Shown: in pieces, positions 5,480 through 63,809 of the stretch
Position numbering within the stretch: position 1 is the stretch's first letter
Layout of the letters: every line of letters starts with the position of its first letter
Made by a program: the position numbers and the translations under genes
Source of the DNA: Octopus bimaculoides
Lineage: Eukaryota
Assembly: GCF_001194135.2 (NCBI RefSeq)
Contig: NC_068987.1
Coordinates: forward strand, 76,662,896 to 76,726,895
Direction: 5' to 3'
Length of the DNA: 64,000 bases
The notes under the pieces: model-generated
The model's database searches: none
Told to the model about the DNA's origin: nothing
The model's input: the letters and a program-made list of their open reading frames with translations, nothing else

Positions 5480-5920
5480 TTCTTCTCTTTCTTCTTCGTT
5501 ATCATCATTACTGACCTTATCATCCTCATCACATCATCACTCAAACCTACACCATCATCATCACCATCATCATCATCACTACTATCAATTTAAATATTCA
5601 TCTGTATTATCATTTTTTCTTTTCTGTTTCAGCTTTGCACTGTCCTTAACAACTTGGAGCCCTTGTGGCCAATAAAAGAAATCATTAGCATTATTTTTGC
5701 TATTATTGTAGTTGTTCTGGTTGTTGCTGTTGTTGTTATAATCATCTTTTCACTCTTTATCATTTTCCTATCACTGTTATTAATACTAATGTAAACAGAA
5801 TCATTGTTGTAGTTATTACTATTATTATTATTATCATCATCATCAACATCCTCATCATCATTATCTTCATCATCATCATCATCATTATTATTATTATTAT
5901 TATTTCTTTATGTAGTTGTC
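5480..5920. repeat. Degenerate (ATC)n/(ATT)n/(GTT)n trinucleotide tracts
   Basis: Direct reading. Confidence 0.85.
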
Positions 5921-8170: not shown

Positions 8171-8242
8171 TACGTGTTTACATTTATTGCTACTTGCATA
8201 TAAACTATACCTATATACACATACATATATACATATATACAG

Positions 8243-8550
8243 TGAAGGTGCATGCCTCAGTGGTTAGAGCATCAGGCTCACAGTCATGAGGTAGCGAGTT
8301 CGATTCCTGTTGTGTTCTTGAGCAAGACACTTTATTTCATGTTGCTTCAGTTCACTCAGCTGTAGAAATAAGTTGTAATGTCACTGGTGCCAAGCTGTAT
8401 TGGCCTTCACCTTTCCTTTGGATAACATCAGTGGCATGGAGAGGGGAGGCTGGTATGCATGGGCGACTGCTGGTTCTCCCATAAAACAACATTGCTTGGA
8501 CCTGTGCAATCCCATAGTCATTCATGACTGGAGGGGGCCTTTACCCCTAT
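8243..8550 (+). mobile_element. SINE type D
   Basis: TGCCTCAGTGGTTAGAGC A box, GAGTTCGATTCC B box, TGTGTTCTTGAGCAAGACACTT. Confidence 0.75.
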
Positions 8551-32375: not shown

Positions 32376-32855
32376 AGCTAGTACAATCATTGACTTTTAC
32401 TTGTTTCAGCCATTTGATTGTGGCCATGCTGGGGCACTGCCTTGCAGGGTTTTTGTCGAACAAATCAACCCCAGGACTTATATGTTTTTTAAAGTCTAGT
32501 ATTTATTCTATCAGCCCTTTTTTTTGGGCCAAATTGCTGAGTTATGGGGACATAAACACACCTACACCAATTGTCAATTGGTGCCATCAAATTTCATCTA
32601 TATGGCTTTGGTGGATATGTGTTTGTAGGAGAAAACACTTGTTCTGTGCTGTATAATGAAATTGAAACAGGAACTACAAGGTTCAAATCAAACTTTTTAA
32701 ACATATAGCTATGCATAGATTCATGTTGTTAATAATGCTATTCTTACATTAAATTTCACAGACATTGTTGAGAAATCGTTATCACATGATCATATAGACT
32801 AAAATACACTCCAATCTGAAAAATATTAAAAAATAGATAACCTTAAATATCTCAC

Positions 32856-33167
32856 CTTGAATGGAACCATTTCCGTCTTGGTCAACTGGTATCAGTAACT
32901 CATCGTTTCCTCTCCGGTTGCACCATGTGATATTGCAGCGACAGAAAGCTCGCTGGAAGATGAGACCGTAGAAACTGCTAAAGCCAAGGAGAATGAGAAT
33001 CAAGCCAAAAGGTGTATACCAAAGGTCATGTCTCCAGTGTGCTGGAACCATAGCAATCCAAATAAATACGACGCATAGGCATTCGAATATTATGCGTGTG
33101 GTGGCGTTCCAATGTTTTGTTAGAGTCACTCCTGCGAATCGGAATGCTGCGAAACTGATCATTGTCC
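32856..33167 (-). CDS. SLC35F6: SLC35F6-like (nucleotide-sugar transporter/DMT family) coding exon
   Basis: Acceptor TTCTATTATATAG|GG, donor CAAG|GTGAGA; 312 nt, phase 1-1; GTMISFAAFRFAGVTLTKHWNATTRIIFECLCVVFIW..PFGLILILLGFSSFYG resembles the recalled SLC35F6 segment SIAFFNFAGISVTKELSATTRMVLDSLRTVVIW..GFLILLIGTALYN; in frame with the 53326 exon. Confidence 0.85.
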
Positions 33168-34879: not shown

Positions 34880-35349
34880 TACAATGGGCTTCTTTCAGTT
34901 TCCGTCTAGCAAATCCACTCACAAGGCTTTGGTCGACCCGAGGCTATAGTAGAAGACACTTGCTCAAGGTGCCATGCAGTGGGACTGAACATGGAACCAT
35001 GTGGTTGGTAAGCAAGCTACTTTATTTCATTTCAGTTTGCCACAAGGGCAGCTGCGGGCTGGACAAGCACATTAATAAGATGAGATGAATGATGAATATG
35101 ATATCAATGAGAGAAGACAGATGCCGCCTGCCGAACTCTGCTTCTCTAAATCATTGTTCTTTTATAAATTACACAAATTTACAAATTGAGGCTATAAACC
35201 TCTTACTTTACAATTTCATTATGTCTTTGAACTGAGGCACTTGCCTCTTACACTTTTCTTTTTCATGGCCACAAGCCCTTTCAATATGAGGCACTCATCC
35301 TCTTATATTTTACTGCAAGCTACTTACCACACAGCCACTCCTGCGCCTA
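34880..35349 (-). mobile_element. SINE type A head half, split by an insertion
   Basis: Head resumes at 35326 ACCACACAGCCACTCCTGCGCCTA. Confidence 0.85.
35023..35314 (-). mobile_element. 292-bp 5'-truncated non-LTR 3'-end-like insertion with 11-bp TSD
   Basis: GCAAGCTACTT at 35012-35022 and 35315-35325. Confidence 0.8.
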
Positions 35350-35824: not shown

Positions 35825-36110
35825 TGTGAACGCATGAGACCTAGTGATTAGGGTGTTGCACTCATGATCCCTAGATTGTGTTTTCAATTCCTGGACCAGT
35901 TGGTGAGATGGGTCTTTGAGCAAAACACTTCATTTCACATTGCTCCAGTCCACTCAGCTGTATATTTCTTCCAGTGATAGCAGGGAAGTTAATTTTGCAA
36001 TGGACTGGTATACCATCCAGTAGGGTGGGGTAGTGTAATCTCAGTCACCTACACACCATGGAAACTGAGTTAAGTTCTGGCCTCATGAGTTTGGGGTCTT
36101 AAAACAGACC
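35825..36110 (+). mobile_element. SINE type D, degenerate
   Basis: CCTAGTGATTAGGGTGTTGCACTCATG..TCTTTGAGCAAAACACTTCATTTCAC. Confidence 0.6.
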
Positions 36111-40280: not shown

Positions 40281-40749
40281 AATAATAACAACTGTATTTA
40301 TAATACTGCAGTAATAAAAGCATAATTTGTTAATAGATATCATTATCAGTAATTAGAAGTCATAAAGACAGATATCAACAGATACTTGACTGTGCATGTG
40401 TCGCTTGGAGGAATCTATGGTTATTACACTAATATTAATCTGTAGAAAGACAAATTGTACATTTAAGCATATAGGTGCAGGCATTGCAAACACATTGCTT
40501 TGACTTCAATACCACTGCATGTCCCCTTAGGCAAGTGACTTCTATTTTCTAATATAGATCTGAGTCAACCAAAGCCTTGTGAGTGAATTTATAATAATAA
40601 TAATAATGAAATTATTGTGTTTAGTGCTCAGGTGCACTACAACTCATCAAAGGTGCATGTACAGTACATAAAATTATGTACAAATGTCAGGTAAGTGAAC
40701 AGTGTATGAGTCATGATATACATGTGTTCATGTGTATAGTGGAGGGGAG

Positions 40750-40912
40750 ATATCAGGTGTAGTGTTGGTGAATTTCAGGAAGCATGGAGGTTTTAAAGGA
40801 TGCAATATCTTGGCAACTAACAACTGATGCAGGTAGTTTGTTCCATGCTTCAGCAACTCTGAGTGTGAAAAAATGTTTCCGAAAGTCATGGGAGCTGTGC
40901 TGTTTTCTGAAT
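40750..40912 (-). mobile_element. CR1/L2-type LINE 3' end
   Basis: RKHFFTLRVAEAWNKLPASVVSCQDIASFK matches the CR1-type RxxFFxxRVxxxWNxLP terminus; followed upstream by a SINE A half. Confidence 0.8.
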
Positions 40913-41224
40913 TTGGTAGATGGAAACTGAAAGAAGCCTATCTTGTGTGTGTGTTCTGTGTTTGTTCCATTATATTGCTTCACAATCAGTGTTGGTTTGT
41001 TTGCATCCTCATAACTTAGCAGTTCAACAAAAGGGGCCAATAGAATAAGTACCAAAACTTTAAAAAAAATAGCTACTGGGGTTAATTTGTTTGACTAAAT
41101 CCTTCAAAGGGATACTCCAGAATAGCCACAGTCTAATAACTGAAACAAATAAGGGATAAAACATACAATTTGAATTTTTCCCCCTGTCTGAACTGATTTC
41201 ATGTGCCCCATTTCAATATGGGGA

Positions 41225-42020
41225 ATAAGTTTATGGTAGGGGAGCTGGTAAAATCATTAGCTCACTAAGCAAAATATGTAGGAGTATTTCATCTATCTTT
41301 ACATTCTGAGTTCAAATCCCACTGAAGTCATCTTTGCCTTTAATCCTCTTCGGGTTGATAAAATAAGTACCATTTGGGTACTAGGGTCAATGTAATCAAT
41401 TTATCCTCTCCCCAGAAATTTCTAGCCATGTGCCAAAATTTGAAACCAATATAGGGATTAAATTATTTTGTTGCTATTACCGGGATAAGCTGTATAATTT
41501 TCCTATCTAATAATGACCAGGCAGCTGATACTTTTATCTAGGGAGAGATTTGACTGCTTACCCTTAAGAAATTAGAGCTATGCATTAACCCTTAAAAGAG
41601 CTGGGGCTAAGATAAACATCATTGGTTTTCATTATTACAGCAATTCATTAAGACAGTAAGCTGGCAGAATCATTAGCACGCCAGCAAAATACTTAATTGT
41701 ATTTTGCTTGTCTGAGTTCTGAGTTCAAATTCTGCCAGGGTCGACTTTGCCGTTCATCCTTTCGGGGTCGATAAATTAAGTACCAGTTGAGTACCGGGGT
41801 CGATGTAATCGACTATCTCCCCACACCACAAAATCCAAGCCTTGTGCCTATAGTAGAACGGATTATTGCAGCTCTTTCATCCAGCTCTTTATATTCCATG
41901 TTCAAATTCCACCAAGGTCCACTTTGCTTTTCATCCTTTTTGGGATCAATAAATGAAGTACAAACTGAACACTGGGGTCTATGTAATTGAGTATTCCCTT
42001 AAAATTACTGATCCTATACC
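41225..42020 (+). mobile_element. Cluster of three SINE type C copies
   Basis: GAGTTCAAAT(C/T)C..CTTTGCC(T/G)TT(A/C)ATCCT..GATAAA..AAGTACCA at ~41300, ~41720, ~41900. Confidence 0.75.
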
Positions 42021-49600: not shown

Positions 49601-50989
49601 CGTTTTGATTTGTAACATTTGAAAACAATAAATTTCAATTTCTGAGTATTTATTTCTGTTTTCAAATTTTACATTTTCCTCACTTGTGCTTACTGAAGTG
49701 GGAATGTATGAGTTTATAAACAAGTCTGCTTATGAAATTGTCATTGCCCTTCGCTAATTTCTTTTTTTCTTCTTTTTTCCAAACTGCGTTTTTGTTCTCA
49801 AGATTTTCTTTGGGGGCATATTCATTGCTATTATGTTTAATGATTAGAACTCCTTCTTCTTCCAGCTCTCCCCAATAGAAGCCTCATTAAATTATGAGCA
49901 AACAAAAGCATCAATATACTATATAAAAATATATAAAAGTGTCCAAGGACGAGTCTTAATTTTTTCCTCCAGTAAGTAACAAGGGGGAAAACATTCAAAC
50001 ATTCTTCTTTAAAGGGGGAAAAAAAAGAAAATGTAGTGTCCATCAAGTAAACTGCAGCAAATTCAACTTTCTCTTAGGACATGATAAAGACATCCTCTCA
50101 TAATAAACAACAATAATAATAATAGTAATAATAATAATGATAAACTATGCATCAAAAATATAAAAAGAAGCAATACAACAATCAAAGTTTAAATTTAAAA
50201 TAATGTAAGAAAAATGTTATATGTAAGATGTAAAACATTGTCATTGCATTGAAATATTATCATCATGTCTTGAGGTAAGAATGGTTAAGGAAAAAAAAGA
50301 TGTTTTTACTTTCTAACTATTCTTAAGATTTTTTTTATTGTTATTAAAAAATGTATAGAAGATAAGAAAAAAAGAAGAAAAATGAGTAAGAAGAAAAAAA
50401 AATTTAGAAAAAATACTAAATACCAGAATAGGAGTAAAATTTGACAGCATAAAAAAAAGGAAGATGGATAGAAGAAGATGAAGGAAAAGAAAGTTCCAGA
50501 ACAATAGAAAGAATTGTTAAATAACATTAATTTTAATTTTTCTTCCTCTGGTTTTCTATTGTTTTTCTCTTTCTTTACTCTCACACTTTTACTTCATTTT
50601 TGTTCTTTACTTTTCTATTTCTCCTACTTTACTTTTGTGTTTTTTTTCTTTCTTCCTATTTCTCCTACCTTTCTTTTGTTTTCTCCTCCTCCTCCCGTTA
50701 CTCTGTCTTTTTCATTTTCTTTCTTATTTTGTTCTAATTCTCTACTACTACTAACACCTCTTCTTCTTCTTCTCCTCCTCCTCCTCCTCCTCCCTCTCCT
50801 CCTCCCTCGCCTCCTCCTCCTCCCTCTTCTTCTTCCATAATGTTTTACTGATCTTCTAAACAGACTACCCAACACTTGCAAATGGAATTGAACCTGCTAA
50901 TATAGGCCAACAAAACACTGGTCATCTGTAAACTGTTGTAGTGGCTCTTGTTCTACTTAAGTACTGATATGGATCACTCTTTGGTGCTC

Positions 50990-52040
50990 ATTTAGTTCTC
51001 AAAATCTGAGTGTGCTCAGCTTCTGAGAACTTCTGACACTTCTTCATACAGCTGACCTCATCCATACACAACACTTGACCATACCAGTACAGTTGTCTCT
51101 CTTGCACACCACATCTGATACTTCTTATCTCCAACTTCTCTCTCAGGGTGCTTACACTCTGTCATGTATGCACACTGACATTACACATCCAGCGGAGCAT
51201 ACTAGTTTCATTTCTTGCAAGCTTACACATGTCCTCAGCAGTCACAGCCCATGTTTCACTGCCATGTAGCATGGCTGTTCACACACATGCATCATAGAGT
51301 CTACCTTTCACTCTGAGCGAGAGGCCCTTTGTTACCAGCAGCAGTAGGAGCTCTCTGAACAGTTACACTCTCAGAGCATCCAACCCTGCTACTGACTTGA
51401 TCACGGAGGTAATGGAAGCTATGAACTACTTCTAGTTTTTCCTCCTGGCATGTGACAAAAGCTGTTTTCTGCATATTTTTAGTGTTTATTGCCCCTGTAC
51501 ATTTGCCACACACAAAAAAATCTTCCCAGTTAGCTTTCCTTTGATATTGCTGCACCCCTTATGTGTCCATAGCTTACACTGAGTATATCTTAGGGAGTTT
51601 CTGCCTACGCCTTTTCTGCAGATTGAGCAGGGCCAACTACCTGAAGGGATCTGTAATTTGTCTACCTTCCTACTTACTAAGACTTTGGATTTTGCTAGAT
51701 TGACACTAAGGCCCTTCGATTCTAATTCTTGCTGTCACATCTGAAACTTCTCCTCTAATTCTGATAGTGACTCAGCTATTAGAGCAAGGTCGTCAGCATT
51801 GAGGAGCTCCCAGGGGCATGAATGCCTTTGTTATTGCCTGGAGGACTGTGATGAATAAGAGGGGGCTGAAGACTGATCCTAGGTGAACCCCCACCCAGAA
51901 TTCTTTACTATACACATTACCAACCCTCACCTTACTGACAGCATCTCTGTACATGGCTTGTACAGCTCTCACTAACTACTCATCTATCCCTAGTTTTTGC
52001 ATTGACCACCAGGCAAGGGAACAGGGGACCCTGTCAAACA
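50990..52040 (-). mobile_element. RTE-clade LINE, RT domain to near the 3' end, decayed
   Basis: KKVFDRVP, VRAVQAMYRDAVSKVRVG, GVHLGSVFSPLLFITVLQAIT, LEVVHSFHYL, KGLSLRVKGRLYDACV*TAMLHGSETWAV. Confidence 0.85.
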
Positions 52041-52362: not shown

Positions 52363-52620
52363 TGTGATTGACCAGACTATTGGATGTTGTTATGCATCAC
52401 TGGTCACAATGTGCTTTGCATTGTTTCAGCTTTTGAATGACACCACCCACTGGTTACACAAGCTGGCCAACACTCCCACTTATGACTGAGTGGACTGGAC
52501 CAACATAGAATGAAGTGTTTTGCTCATGAACCCGATGTGCTCACCTGGTCTGGGAATCAAACACATGATCTGGTGATTGCAAGGGCAATACCCTGACCAC
52601 TGAGCCATGAACCTTCACAT
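52340..52620 (-). mobile_element. SINE type D
   Basis: Minus head TGGCTCAGTGGTCAGGG..GTTTGATTCCCAGACC. Confidence 0.7.
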
Positions 52621-53924: not shown

Positions 53925-54140
53925 ATTAAGGTGGCAAGCTGGTAGAATCGTTAGCACAGTGGATGAAATGCTTAGTGGTATTTCACCTGTCGCTACATTC
54001 TGAGTTCAAATTCCACCAAGGTTGACATCCTTTTGGAGGTTGAAAAAATTAAGTACCAGTGAAACACTGGGGTCGATGTAATCAACTTACCCCCTCCCCC
54101 AAAATTTCAGGCTTTATGTCTGTAGTAGAAAGGATTATTA
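53925..54140 (+). mobile_element. SINE type C
   Basis: AAGGTGGCAAGCTGGTAGAA..GAGTTCAAATTCC..AATTAAGTACCAG. Confidence 0.8.
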
Positions 54141-54427: not shown

Positions 54428-54660
54428 ACTAAGGTGGCAAGCTGGCAGAAACGTTAGCATGCCGGGCGAAATGCTTAACAGTATTTCATCTGTCTTTACT
54501 TTCTGAGTTCAAATTCCACCGAAGTTGACTTTGCCATTCATCCTTTCATGGTCAATAAATTAAGTACCAGTTGCGTACTGAGGTCGATTTAATCGACTGC
54601 CCCCCCCCCCCAAAAAAAAATAATAATTTCGGGCCTTGTGCCTAGAGTAGAAAAGAATAT
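54428..54660 (+). mobile_element. SINE type C
   Basis: CTAAGGTGGCAAGCTGGCAGAA..GGGCCTTGTGCCTAGAGTAGAAAAG. Confidence 0.8.
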
Positions 54661-55766: not shown

Positions 55767-56620
55767 NNNNNNNNNNNNNNNNNNNNNNNNNNNNNNNNNN
55801 NNNNNNNNNNNNNNNNNNNNNNNNNNNNNNNNNNNNNNNNNNNNNNNNNNNNNNNNNNNNNNNNNNNNNNNNNNNNNNNNNNNNNNNNNNNNNNNNNNNN
55901 NNNNNNNNNNNNNNNNNNNNNNNNNNNNNNNNNNNNNNNNNNNNNNNNNNNNNNNNNNNNNNNNNNNNNNNNNNNNNNNNNNNNNNNNNNNNNNNNNNNN
56001 NNNNNNNNNNNNNNNNNNNNNNNNNNNNNNNNNNNNNNNNNNNNNNNNNNNNNNNNNNNNNNNNNNNNNNNNNNNNNNNNNNNNNNNNNNNNNNNNNNNN
56101 NNNNNNNNNNNNNNNNNNNNNNNNNNNNNNNNNNNNNNNNNNNNNNNNNNNNNNNNNNNNNNNNNTCTGTCTACCAAATCCACTCACAAGGCTTTGGTCG
56201 GCCTGAGGCTATAGTAGAAGATACTTGCCTAAGGTGCCACGCAGTGGGACTGAACCCGGAACCATGTGGTTCATGAGCAAGCTACTTTATTTCATAAATA
56301 TTTGCCATAAAGGCATTACAAAGAGGGGACGAACAAGGACAGACAAACATTAAAGGGGTGAAGTAGCTGTATCAATTAAATATTTACAATTTTAAATGTA
56401 CAATAATAATTTCATTATATTTACAATGTTCGCTTAAAGCATTGCTCATTACAGATGCAATTTGTAATGGCTTTCCTGAAGGATAGGCGTCCGACCACCA
56501 GAGTAGACCCCTTGCTTTTTCTTTTCCTTGTTTTTGGCTTCCACTTACCTGGTGCCAAACACTCCCAGCTTCCTCGCCACGGGGAGGAAGCTACTTACCA
56601 CACAACCACTCCTATGCCTT
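55520..56620 (-). mobile_element. SINE type A with a gap in the central (TA)n and an insertion in the head
   Basis: Head resumes at 56597 ACCACACAACCACTCCTATGCC. Confidence 0.8.
56288..56587 (-). mobile_element. 300-bp 5'-truncated non-LTR 3'-end-like insertion with 9-bp TSD
   Basis: AAGCTACTT at 56279-56287 and 56588-56596. Confidence 0.8.
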
Positions 56621-62129: not shown

Positions 62130-62350
62130 GACACATGGCCTGGTGGTTAAGGTGTTGCACTCACAATCTAACAATTATGATTTCAATTCCTTGACCAGGT
62201 GGTGCATTGTGTTCTTGAGCTAAACACTTCACATCACGTTGTTCTCTGATCAATTCAATACTTGACACAAGGTATCTGTTCAAACAACGCCGATTTGATG
62301 GAGAAAGTGAACTAAAGTGTGACACAAACATTTAATCATTATAAACAAAT
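62130..62350 (+). mobile_element. SINE type D variant
   Basis: TGGCCTGGTGGTTAAGG..TTTCAATTCC..TGTGTTCTTGAGCTAAACACTT. Confidence 0.65.
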
Positions 62351-62856: not shown

Positions 62857-63078
62857 AAATTATAATACAGGGTATCCAAGAGATACCGNNNNNNNNNNNN
62901 NNNNNNNNNNNNNNNNNNNNNNNNNNNNNNNNNNNNNNNNNNNNNNNNNNTTTACTGGTTTATTTTGTCTTCGGCTTCGCTCCTTGTGCTATGTGAACAT
63001 TTATTGTGGTTTAGAGTCAGGATTTGACTGCTATTTTTCAGCGTGGCGGTATCTCTTAGATACCCTGTATTATAATTT
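62857..63078. mobile_element. MITE with 32-bp TIRs
   Basis: 62857-62888 AAATTATAATACAGGGTATCCAAGAGATACCG vs the reverse complement of 63047-63078, one mismatch. Confidence 0.8.
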
Positions 63079-63164
63079 TAAATAATTATTACCTTTGATG
63101 GTTTTTATTCCCATGCTGGCCACTTGATAAAATCAATATTTTAAATATCGATCTTATCCTTATT

Positions 63165-63195
<31 letters not shown>

Positions 63196-63309
63196 TTTAG
63201 TTTCAGTCCAAGGACCTCAGCCATGCTGGGGCACCACCGTTTACATTGCTTCACTTTCACTAAACCCCCTCAGATGTGTAACATTCAGTGGATGAAGGAG
63301 TTTGATGCT

Positions 63310-63777
63310 GTTACTCTCATTTGTGTTTCTTACCTTGAGGTTCATCCGGAACTCTTGAAGAAGGAGATCCAGTTTTGTTTGTGAAAAAGCTTACATCCAC
63401 ACCATGCAGGTCTCCCAGGCTTTGTGAGAGGATGTTGAAGAGCTGTGGGCCTTTGAAGCTCAAGCTGTAGCAGTATTTGGTTTTGTATCCTGATGGCAAT
63501 GTTGATGCTTTTGGTATTATACAGTGCTGCCCCATCCTGCTGTTCATGTAACTGACAGTGCCAAAGTTTGGCACAGGCTTTTCCAGATGTATATTACTGC
63601 ATATCTTTCCCGCCTTCACTCCAGGGAATAGAATCTTAACTCTTCCAGTCTCTCCCAGTGGCTGATATGTCACTTGTGTTGGTAGTGCTGGGCTTGGAAT
63701 TTCCAGCATTAAACTGCATGTTATTTCCCTTAGCCCACCTGTATATTGCCCCCATCTCATGTTGTAGATGCACTGTA

Positions 63778-63780
<3 letters not shown>
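63310..63780 (-). mobile_element. CR1/L2-type LINE 3' region, decayed
   Basis: LQHEMGAIYRWAKGNNMQFN and CIIPK..SLSFKGPQLFNIL..RVPDEP. Confidence 0.7.

Positions 63781-63809
<29 letters not shown>

What the first reader, a model, noticed from the sequence alone, without database searches (positions are those of the whole stretch)
35012..35325. Retro-insertion at a fixed nucleotide of the SINE-A tRNA-like head: candidate SINE-targeting site-specific retrotransposon
Seen: a 292-bp insert splits a SINE-A head at GCAAGCTACTT^ACCAC with an 11-bp TSD. A second, largely different 300-bp insert sits at exactly the same base of another copy 21 kb away (56288-56587, 9-bp TSD). Both have the same orientation and related ends at that junction (TATTTCATTTCAGTTTGCCACAAGGGC vs TATTTCATAAATATTTGCCATAAAGGC). 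That is 2 of the ~7 copies carrying the GGTAAGTAGC head variant. Established: a fixed 3' junction, variable 5' junction/TSD length and 5' truncation are hallmarks of target-primed reverse transcription, and Tx1-clade and some REL-type LINEs are sequence-specific for multicopy targets. Inference: a cephalopod LINE family uses an abundant SINE (or the RNA gene it mimics) as a safe-haven target just 3' of the Pol III A box, which would also disable the SINE.
Basis: partly seen in the sequence, partly recalled or inferred. Interest (0 to 1): 0.88.

Follow-up and report, generated by a model that had tools for sequence, protein, structure and literature searches.

The report
Two retro-insertions at one SINE nucleotide
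Two unrelated ~300-bp retrotransposed pieces that share a 28-nt 3' end sit at exactly the same nucleotide, in the same orientation, in two separate copies of an abundant octopus SINE. This points to sequence-directed insertion, but a dedicated SINE-targeting LINE is not shown.

Summary
The window is Octopus bimaculoides DNA from the SLC35F6-like gene region. It holds about 19 alignable copies of a tRNA-derived CORE-type SINE ("SINE-A"). Seven of them carry the head variant GGTAAGTAGC.

Two of those seven are split at the same bond, CTACTT^ACC on the + strand:
- a 292-bp insert with a perfect 11-bp target-site duplication (TSD);
- a 300-bp insert with a perfect 9-bp TSD, or 13 bp with one mismatch.

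The two SINE copies have different flanks and share no private mutations. The inserts are non-coding, have no terminal inverted repeats, and are unrelated except for their last 28 nt (21/28 identical). That shared end is a 4-bp-stem, 5-nt-loop hairpin followed by ...ATGAAATA.

About 57 nt of insert 2's tail match the 3' tail of a different SINE subfamily that sits elsewhere in the window. The tail is therefore a LINE-type 3' module that is not confined to SINE-A. SINE-A's own tail matches an RTE LINE 3' end, so a different partner LINE is implied.

Best reading: two independent target-primed reverse transcription events guided by at least 6-8 bp of target sequence. In this window that sequence is supplied almost only by SINE-A heads.

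No parent LINE, ORF or genome-wide census could be obtained, so "site-specific SINE-targeting LINE" remains a hypothesis.

The parts
34880..35022 (-). SINE-A copy 1, 3' part (SINE positions ~28-170), ending in a (TA)n tail
   Evidence: blastn against the reconstructed SINE, 100% over 143 nt; alignment
35012..35022 (.). TSD copy 1, left: GCAAGCTACTT. Its 3' end is the inferred first-strand nick (CTACTT^ACC on the + strand)
35023..35314 (-). Insert 1 (292 bp). No protein homologue detected. The 5' half (element sense) is built of ~50-55-bp direct repeats
35023..35050 (-). Shared 3' tail of insert 1: TGCCCTTGTGGCAAACTGAAATGAAATA (hairpin TGCC-CTTGT-GGCA plus terminal TGAAATGAAATA)
35315..35325 (.). 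TSD copy 1, right
35315..35347 (-). SINE-A copy 1, 5' head part (GGCGCAGGAGTGGCTGTGTGGTAAGTAGCTTGC) with the A-box-like TGGCTGTGTGG
56166..56287 (-). SINE-A copy 2, 3' part; its distal end is cut off by an assembly gap
56279..56287 (.). TSD copy 2, left: AAGCTACTT (possibly 13 nt starting at 56275, with one mismatch)
56288..56587 (-). Insert 2 (300 bp), no protein homologue detected
56288..56345 (-). 3' tail domain of insert 2, ~57 nt homologous to the SINE-B-variant tail. The last 28 nt are TGCCTTTATGGCAAATATTTATGAAATA
   Evidence: local score 44, z = 7.9
56588..56596 (.). TSD copy 2, right
56588..56618 (-). SINE-A copy 2, 5' head part
19548..19795 (-). SINE-B variant. Its 3' tail (...TGTCTGTCTTTGTTTCTCCCCTCTATGTTTAGCCCCATGTGGGCAATAAAGAAACTA) is homologous to insert 2's tail. 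It is not inserted in a SINE-A
8317..8340 (-). Antisense CORE of a CORE-SINE (ATGAAATAAAGTGTCTTGCTCAAG). It matches the insert-2 junction 24-mer with 3 mismatches

Best explanation
These are two independent target-primed reverse transcription (TPRT) insertions. Each insert is either a 5'-truncated LINE 3' end or a short tail-only non-autonomous retroposon. The two have different bodies but the same LINE-type 3' recognition tail: a small hairpin with a YTTRT loop, then AA-N5-ATGAAATA.

Proposed steps:
1. The strand antisense to the SINE is nicked at 5'-CTACTT^ACC-3'. This bond lies just 3' of the A box, inside the palindrome GGTAAG-TAGCTTG-CTTACC of the tRNA-like head.
2. The freed 3'-OH primes cDNA synthesis at the RNA's ...AUGAAAUA end.
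3. The other strand is cut 9-13 nt away, in the opposite arm of the palindrome. This produces the TSDs.

Target choice is directed by at least ~6-8 bp of sequence. In this genome region that motif is supplied almost only by SINE-A heads, so SINE-A becomes the de facto landing pad. The insertion separates the A box from the B box by ~300 bp.

The partner LINE is not the RTE that mobilises SINE-A itself. It is a lineage whose tail is also carried by a SINE-B subfamily.

Shown: the insertion anatomy, the independence of the two events, the shared tail, the tail's homology to the SINE-B variant, and the scarcity of the motif outside SINE-A.

Inferred: TPRT, the order of the nicks, the source of the specificity, and the identity of the partner LINE.
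For: - Perfect TSDs of different length flank both inserts, and neither has terminal inverted repeats.
- Both have the same junction base and the same orientation.
- The last 28 nt are 21/28 identical, against 0 of 200,000 random 28-mers. The rest of the inserts is not convincingly related (global score 0).
- The hairpin folds in every tail tested. Stem sequences are swapped between families with a similar loop (mostly CTTGT): GCC..GGC, GGC..GCC and GCCC..GGGC.
- Insert 2's tail is homologous to the 3' end of a complete tRNA-headed SINE-B copy (z = 7.9). This fixes the tail as a 3' end and therefore fixes the orientation.
- The host SINE copies are independent.
- GGTAAGTA occurs 7/7 times, and TAAGTAGC and TGGTAAGT 7/9 times each, inside SINE-A heads.
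- The chance of a same-site hit under uniform insertion is ~1.5e-4.
- SINE-A's own tail matches an RTE 3' end, which is a different tail type.
- A third nested insertion in a SINE-A (40590-40908) has a different tail, position and orientation. SINE-A is therefore not simply fragile at one spot for all elements.
Against: - There are only two events.
- No parent element or ORF was found, so the LINE origin of the inserts rests on the tail alone.
- One copy of a related tail (the SINE-B variant) sits outside SINE-A, and an old tail-like element at 5659 has an unresolved context. The machinery is therefore not strictly SINE-A-specific.
- 5 of the 7 young heads and all ~12 older heads are uninterrupted.
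- The finding was picked out after the fact from a large scan, so the raw p-values overstate the significance.
Confidence: 0.6

Rival explanations
1. A dedicated site-specific LINE lineage. An autonomous octopus LINE, for example a Dong/R4-type element with a restriction-like endonuclease or a Tx1-type element, would have an endonuclease that recognises the SINE-A head palindrome. Most of its copies genome-wide would sit at this bond. The two inserts would be its 5'-truncated copies or its dependent non-autonomous elements.
For: - 2 of 2 copies with the exact ...TGGCAAA-N5-ATGAAATA tail in the window are at this site.
- The nicks on the two strands fall at near-symmetric positions in the two arms of a palindrome (CTT^ACC and C^TTACC), as a dimeric or restriction-like nuclease might cut.
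- Dong-R4, L1-Tx1 and R2 LINEs are reported as recently active in O. vulgaris (PMC13282606).
- tRNA-gene-specific LINEs exist (NeSL-1_TV, LIN15_SM, LIN25_SM; PMC4640811).
- No CORE-SINE core and no SINE-A true core in the window is interrupted by this tail type, although they resemble the site.
Against: - No ORF, no parent and no clade assignment were obtained.
- A homologous tail is carried by a SINE-B copy in a non-SINE-A site.
- The two insert bodies are unrelated, so at least two source families are needed.
- N = 2.
Confidence: 0.28
2. Homology-primed integration rather than endonuclease specificity. The template RNAs would extend 3' of ...AUGAAAUA into an antisense-CORE-like sequence (AAGUGUCUUGCUCAAG), either intrinsic to the tail or read through from a parent sitting in a CORE-SINE. 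That extension anneals to the similar sequence AAGTAGCTTGCTYA in the SINE-A head. The junction is then set by where the homology starts, whichever nuclease or break provides the 3'-OH.
For: - The junction 24-mer of copy 2 (8 nt of insert plus 16 nt of SINE-A) matches the antisense CORE of the CORE-SINE at 8317-8340 with 3 mismatches. Expected by chance: 0 in 100 shuffles and 9e-5 analytically.
- The copy 1 junction matches the same sequence with 5 mismatches (expected 0.016).
- A closely similar antisense-CORE motif recurs at 473 and 22122.
- In copy 2, three clustered substitutions just past the TSD make the flank closer to CORE (GCTCATG, against CORE GCTCAAG and SINE-A GCTTACC).
Against: - The inserts themselves are not significantly similar to CORE-SINEs beyond the terminal 8-mer.
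- ATGAAATA alone is expected ~8 times in the window.
- True CORE sequences are better matches, but none of the ~6 CORE-SINE copies or SINE-A true cores is interrupted.
- If the 13-nt TSD is real, the GAG change predates the insertion.
Confidence: 0.2
3. Chance. Two unrelated nested insertions happened to fall at the same base of an abundant repeat, and were noticed because very many windows were scanned.
For: - SINE-A occupies ~7% of the window, and nested insertions are common.
- The finding was selected after the fact.
Against: - Same base, same orientation and a shared 28-nt tail must all coincide.
- The site coincidence alone is ~1.5e-4.
- The tail identity was reached by 0 of 200,000 random 28-mers.
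Confidence: 0.05
4. A composite master copy, a segmental duplication or an assembly artefact. The two interrupted SINEs would descend from one already-interrupted copy, or the inserts would be mis-joins in a gap-rich draft assembly.
For: - The window has 15 N-runs, and copy 2 abuts one of them.
Against: - The insert bodies are not convincingly related outside the tail.
- TSD lengths differ.
- Flanks differ, and the SINE copies share no private substitutions.
- Both inserts, their TSDs and both SINE halves lie in uninterrupted sequence.
- A mis-join would not create a perfect flanking duplication, let alone twice.
Confidence: 0.03

Closest known systems
Target-specific non-LTR retrotransposons that insert into other repeats or small-RNA genes: Tx1L into the Tx1D transposon; Keno and Utopia into U2 snRNA genes; NeSL-1_TV, LIN15_SM and LIN25_SM into tRNA genes (PMC4640811; the remainder from general knowledge)
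   Same: Insertion at a fixed nucleotide of a multicopy sequence. TPRT-type junctions with a defined 3' end. The multicopy target acts as a 'safe haven'. The target here is a tRNA-like sequence.
   Different: No autonomous element, endonuclease type or clade is known here. Only two copies are seen. The target is a SINE head variant rather than a functional RNA gene. A related tail also occurs outside the target.
Stringent-type LINE/SINE pairs that share a 3' stem-loop and terminal short repeats (eel UnaL2/UnaSINE1, L2/CR1-type tails; Ohshima and Okada's 'common tail' concept, from general knowledge)
   Same: A small conserved hairpin followed by a short, partly reiterated terminal motif (TGAAA-TGAAA-TA). 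The same tail is carried by otherwise unrelated short elements and by a tRNA-headed SINE subfamily.
   Different: Those systems are not known for nucleotide-precise targeting. The partner LINE is not identified here, and RT recognition of the hairpin is untested.
R1/R2-type precise integration, helped by annealing between target DNA and 3' read-through sequence of the element RNA (general knowledge)
   Same: The junction looks like a pre-existing contiguous sequence (antisense CORE). That is what annealing-guided initiation would give.
   Different: There is no evidence of read-through transcripts here, and the target is not rDNA.
Dada DNA transposons, which target tRNA and snRNA genes (general knowledge)
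   Same: Insertion at a fixed position of a small-RNA-like sequence.
   Different: Dada elements have terminal inverted repeats and TSDs of fixed length. These inserts have no such repeats and have TSDs of 11 and 9 (or 13) bp.

Membership tests
Non-LTR (TPRT) retro-insertion | Target-site duplications of variable length flanking the insert | tested here: met
   11/11 and 9/9 perfect duplications; the second is possibly 13 nt with one mismatch
Non-LTR (TPRT) retro-insertion | A defined, family-specific 3' end at one junction and a variable 5' end at the other | tested here: met
   Shared 28-nt tail at the fixed junction. The 5' ends are unrelated. The tail is shown to be a 3' end by homology to the 3' end of a complete SINE-B copy
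Non-LTR (TPRT) retro-insertion | No terminal inverted repeats or LTRs | tested here: met
   The repeat finder shows no terminal inverted or long terminal repeats
LINE (autonomous non-LTR retrotransposon) | Encodes a reverse transcriptase and an endonuclease, or is a truncated copy of an element that does | tested here: not met
   All six frames are interrupted by stops, apart from a 67-codon stretch open at the 5' end of insert 2. No protein homologue at E <= 10. No longer copy in the window or fetched loci
Site-specific LINE (Tx1, R4/Dong or NeSL type) | The large majority of genomic copies lie at one target sequence | not testable with these tools
   No octopus genome collection could be searched. 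2 of 2 exact-tail copies in 64 kb are at the site, but a related tail lies elsewhere. Scans of metagenome, prokaryote-genome and viral collections found no octopus DNA
Site-specific LINE (Tx1, R4/Dong or NeSL type) | Clade assignment from RT/EN phylogeny; APE or restriction-like endonuclease | not testable with these tools
   No coding part of the element is available
tRNA-derived SINE with a LINE-derived tail (the target, SINE-A) | tRNA-like head with A and B boxes, and a 3' tail shared with a partner LINE | tested here: met
   A-box-like TGGCTGTGTGG and B-box-like GGTTCAGTCCC in the consensus. The tail GTAGACGGAAACTGAAAGAAGCCCGTCG(TA)n matches the 3' end downstream of an RTE ORF in L003. ARAGORN and Rfam do not call it a tRNA
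Stringent-type 3' tail (stem-loop recognised by the partner RT) | Conserved hairpin with compensatory changes, plus a terminal repeat | tested here: inconclusive
   4-bp-stem, 5-nt-loop hairpins are predicted in all tails, but individual z-scores are weak. Stem swaps between families fit covariation, but there are few sequences and no formal covariation test was run
Dada-type DNA transposon | Terminal inverted repeats and TSDs of fixed length | tested here: not met
   No terminal inverted repeats; TSDs of 11 versus 9 or 13 bp

The most novel reading that the evidence does not exclude
Octopus genomes harbour a LINE lineage, with dependent short elements, whose endonuclease recognises the palindromic D-loop/anticodon-like hairpin of the young RTE-mobilised SINE-A head. 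It inserts there nucleotide-precisely. This would be the first LINE specialised on a SINE as its landing site, a parasite of a parasite that also splits the SINE's Pol III promoter.
Probability: 0.28. Interest if true: 0.72.

Novelty: new variant of a known kind. Interest (0 to 1): 0.47.

Why it matters
If a genome-wide census confirms it, this would add a SINE head to the known list of multicopy targets of sequence-specific non-LTR retrotransposons (rDNA, snRNA and tRNA genes, microsatellites, telomeres, one DNA transposon).

It would also show TE-on-TE targeting in a genome where SINEs and LINEs each make up more than 10% of the DNA. Each hit would inactivate a SINE copy, so one retroelement lineage could shape the activity of another.

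The shared hairpin tail, found on unrelated short elements and on a SINE-B subfamily, also gives a handle on which octopus LINE mobilises which non-autonomous elements.

If the census is negative, the finding is an ordinary pair of nested insertions with a modest target preference.

Tried and rejected
1. Protein homology for the inserts. One search with their longest stop-free stretches (67 and 54 codons of insert 2, two shorter ones of insert 1, all element-sense) joined together found nothing at E <= 10.

2. Looking for other interrupted copies as translated junction peptides (...SKLLYFI.CHKG). No candidate at all was found. The protein collection holds no raw ORFs from octopus repeats.

3. 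Pattern scans for the junction and for a conserved SINE-A 20-22-mer in JGI metagenomes, prokaryotic genomes and viral contigs. All returned 0 hits.

4. Fetching the orthologous or re-assembled locus through the host gene (SLC35F6-like). The gene ranges are 171-454 kb, too long to obtain DNA. Two isoforms are not on record.

5. Fetching more octopus DNA through LINE RT proteins.
   - L001 (O. vulgaris, 21 kb) has only 2 SINE-A copies and no insert relatives.
   - L002 lacks SINE-A (blastn), and L004 gave no exact match to one SINE-A 15-mer, so neither ENA locus looks like Octopus.
   - L003 is a 1.3-kb octopus-like scaffold.

6. CORE-SINE origin of the inserts in the opposite orientation. Rejected: there is no significant similarity, and insert 2's tail is clearly a 3' end.

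7. DNA transposon or MITE. Rejected: no terminal inverted repeats and unequal TSDs.

8. A known RNA gene inside the inserts or as the target. Rejected: there are no Rfam or ARAGORN hits.

Full report
**What is there.** The window is Octopus bimaculoides DNA. An exon-like ORF at 32785-33162 (minus strand) is 100% identical to SLC35F6-like XP_014771771.1. The gene spans more than 450 kb in the newer assembly. The window is gap-rich (15 N-runs) and packed with repeats.

A ~170-bp tRNA-derived SINE ("SINE-A") gives about 25 blastn hits. Nineteen copies could be aligned. The consensus is GGCGCAGGAGTGGCTGTGTGGTAAGTAGCTTGCTTACCAACCACATGGTTCCGGGTTCAGTCCCACTGCGTGGCACCTTGGGCAAGTGTCTTC...GGTAGACGGAAACTGAAAGAAGCCCGTCG(TA)n. 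Seven heads carry the young variant GGTAAGTAGC, and the older ones have GGTAAGAAGC.

Both interrupted copies lie on the minus strand.
- Copy 1 has the TSD GCAAGCTACTT at 35012-35022 and 35315-35325, around a 292-bp insert.
- Copy 2 has the TSD AAGCTACTT at 56279-56287 and 56588-56596, around a 300-bp insert.
- The repeat finder confirms both. It suggests the second TSD may be 13 nt with one mismatch.

Written in SINE sense, the structures are:
- ...GTGTGGT[AAGTAGCTTGC]-insert-...GAAATGAAATA[AAGTAGCTTGC]TTACC...
- ...GTGTGGT[AAGTAGCTT]-insert-...TTTATGAAATA[AAGTAGCTT]GCTCATG...

The junction next to the shared insert end is at the identical bond in both. The other junction differs by 2 (or 2-4) nt.

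**Independence.** The two SINE-A copies share no private substitutions, and their flanks differ where both can be read; the SINE-tail side of copy 2 runs into an assembly gap. Outside the tail region the inserts do not align convincingly (global score 0), and neither has another copy in the window. A composite master copy or a segmental duplication is therefore excluded. A double mis-join that produces perfect flanking duplications twice is very unlikely.

**What the inserts are.**
- The only long stop-free stretch is 67 codons at the 5' end of insert 2.
- They have no protein homologues.
- They contain no Rfam family.
- They have no terminal inverted repeats.

Their only common feature is the last 28 nt in element sense: TGCCCTTGTGGCAAACTGAAATGAAATA versus TGCCTTTATGGCAAATATTTATGAAATA. 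These are 21/28 identical when anchored at the junction. None of 200,000 random 28-mers from the window reaches that. Each tail folds into a hairpin with a 4-bp stem and a 5-nt loop.

This architecture is not private to the two inserts:
- Ordinary copies of a second tRNA-headed SINE ("SINE-B") end in ...GGCCTTGTGCCTATAGTAGAAAGGATTATT.
- A variant SINE-B at 19548-19795 ends in ...AGCCCCATGTGGGCAATAAAGAAACTA.
- An old element at 5659 has GCCCTTGTGGCCAATAAAAGAAATCA.
- A LINE 3' fragment at 62950-63781 ends in ...GGTCCTTGGACTGAAACTAAAA(TA)n.

The loop is similar across these families (mostly CTTGT) while the stem halves are swapped (GGC/GCC, GCC/GGC, GCCC/GGGC). That is what a structural 3' recognition element would show.

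Most importantly, about 57 nt of insert 2's tail are homologous to the tail of the variant SINE-B (score 44 against shuffles of 17.8 +/- 3.3, z = 7.9). In that SINE the tail is unambiguously the 3' end. This fixes the orientation of the inserts and shows that the fixed junction is the 3' junction, as TPRT predicts.

It also shows that this tail type can integrate outside SINE-A, because that SINE-B copy sits in a (GATA)n-like site.

**A different partner from SINE-A's own.** An octopus-like scaffold (L003) carries an RTE-type RT ORF. The ORF is followed by ...GTAGACAGAAACTGGAAGAAGCCCGCCATATATATA, which is the SINE-A tail. SINE-A is therefore RTE-mobilised, and the inserts use another tail.

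**How specific is the site?** Under uniform insertion, the chance that a second insert hits the homologous bond and orientation of another SINE-A head is ~1.5e-4. This is before requiring the same tail.

Some sequence direction is therefore needed, but not much. In this window GGTAAGTA occurs 7 times, all in SINE-A heads. TAAGTAGC and TGGTAAGT are each 7/9 in SINE-A. GGTAAG occurs 35 times. A 7-8 bp preference would make SINE-A the near-exclusive target without the element being "aimed" at a SINE.

A third nested insertion in a SINE-A (40590-40908) is a LINE fragment with an (ATT)n tail and a 7-bp TSD. It is at another position and in the opposite orientation. The head site is therefore not a universal hotspot.

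**Anatomy of the site.** The bond lies just 3' of the A-box-like TGGCTGTGTGG, inside the palindrome GGTAAG-TAGCTTG-CTTACC. The inferred first nick is CTT^ACC on the antisense strand. The second nick in copy 1 is C^TTACC on the sense strand, nearly symmetric. In copy 2 the second arm is mutated (CTCATG) and the nick is shifted. This fits a nuclease reading the arms, but with two events it is only suggestive.

**An unexpected coincidence.** The junction 24-mer of copy 2 (8 nt of insert plus 16 nt of SINE-A) matches the antisense CORE domain of a CORE-SINE at 8317-8340 with 3 mismatches. The expected number is 0 in 100 shuffles and 9e-5 analytically. The copy 1 junction matches with 5 mismatches (expected 0.016). 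A closely similar antisense-CORE motif recurs at 473 and 22122.

The inserts themselves are not significantly CORE-like. One reading is that the template RNA continues 3' into a CORE-like sequence that anneals to the SINE-A head and sets the junction. Against this, true CORE sequences in the window are not hit. I keep it as a rival mechanism.

**What could not be done.** No octopus genome could be searched as DNA.
- Scans of metagenome, prokaryote and viral collections were empty.
- The host-gene loci were too long to fetch.
- RT-based look-ups gave only 21 kb of O. vulgaris with two SINE-A copies, plus two loci that do not look like Octopus: L002 has no SINE-A by blastn, and L004 lacks an exact SINE-A 15-mer.

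**Comparison with known systems.** Sequence-specific non-LTR elements that use multicopy targets are well known, including tRNA-gene-specific ones (NeSL-1_TV, LIN15_SM, LIN25_SM; PMC4640811). Tx1L, which targets a DNA transposon, is known from general knowledge. Dong-R4, L1-Tx1 and R2 lineages are reported as recently active in O. vulgaris (PMC13282606).

The present case behaves like such a system at two loci. Membership in any such family cannot be claimed because there is no coding sequence, no clade and no census. The shared hairpin tail resembles stringent-type LINE/SINE tails (UnaL2-like, general knowledge).

**Verdict.** It is best explained as two independent, sequence-directed TPRT insertions of elements with a common LINE-type tail into the SINE-A head (confidence ~0.6).

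A dedicated SINE-targeting LINE is possible (~0.28) but unproven. It would be a new variant of a known kind. Interest is moderate.

Noticed in passing
L003:1195-1250, and SINE-A tails such as window 34880-34915: The 3' end downstream of an RTE-type RT ORF on an octopus-like ENA metagenome scaffold (...GTAGACAGAAACTGGAAGAAGCCCGCCATATATATA) matches the SINE-A tail. SINE-A therefore appears to be mobilised by an RTE LINE with a (TA)n end.
   Followed up: partly
window 40505-40941: This is another SINE-A (+ strand), split at about position 137 by a 318-bp LINE 3' fragment in the opposite orientation. The fragment has an (ATT)n tail and a 7-bp TSD (TGAATTT). Its site, tail and orientation all differ from the two inserts under study.
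   Followed up: partly
window 8236-8545 (+), also 22084-22234, 35916-35962, 467-503, 52486-52618, 62207-62241: These are CORE-SINE copies: a tRNA head followed by CTTGAGCAAGACACTTTATTTCATGTTGCTTCAGTTCACTCAGCTG, which resembles the MIR-type CORE. The antisense of this CORE closely resembles the insert/SINE-A junction. The antisense SINE-A head itself looks like a pseudo-CORE.
   Followed up: partly
window 56270-56287 and 56567-56596: Copy 2 has three clustered substitutions just beyond the TSD (CATGAG instead of GGTAAG on the + strand). The TSD can be read as 13 nt with one mismatch. A 9-bp perfect palindrome (AGCTTCCTC...GAGGAAGCT) spans the insert's 5' junction and 5 nt of the TSD. This may be a trace of how the 5' end was resolved.
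   Followed up: no
window 35179-35314: The 5' half of insert 1 (element sense) consists of two to three ~50-55-bp direct repeats. Each contains a GAGG...CCTC hairpin. One unit carries a second tail-like motif (GGGCTTGTGGCCATGAAAAAGAAAAG).
   Followed up: no
window 54431-54650, 41650-41860, 53928-54130, 19548-19795: SINE-B copies share head and body (positions 14-182) but carry at least two different 3' tail modules. This is an example of tail swapping among octopus SINE subfamilies.
   Followed up: partly
window 32785-33162 (-): This is an exon of an SLC35F6-like gene, 100% identical to the O. bimaculoides protein. The gene spans ~454 kb in assembly GCA_001194135.2 and ~171-178 kb in O. sinensis and O. 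vulgaris.
   Followed up: partly
window 50950-51800 (-), 62950-63781 (-), 14924-15350 (-): These are degraded LINE fragments. The first is an RTE-like ORF2 C-terminus with a PHD-like CxxC motif, 74% identical to an O. vulgaris RT protein. The second is a LINE C-terminus ending ...VPDEPQ, with a 3' end GGACTGAAACTAAAA(TA)n. The third is an RT-domain fragment.
   Followed up: partly
proteins P0005, P0012, P0017 and locus L003: Mollusc or cephalopod-like LINE RT sequences are deposited inside bacterial or metagenomic records, for example a 'Herbaspirillum sp.' MAG protein and JGI/ENA metagenome scaffolds. This looks like host or prey DNA contamination.
   Followed up: no
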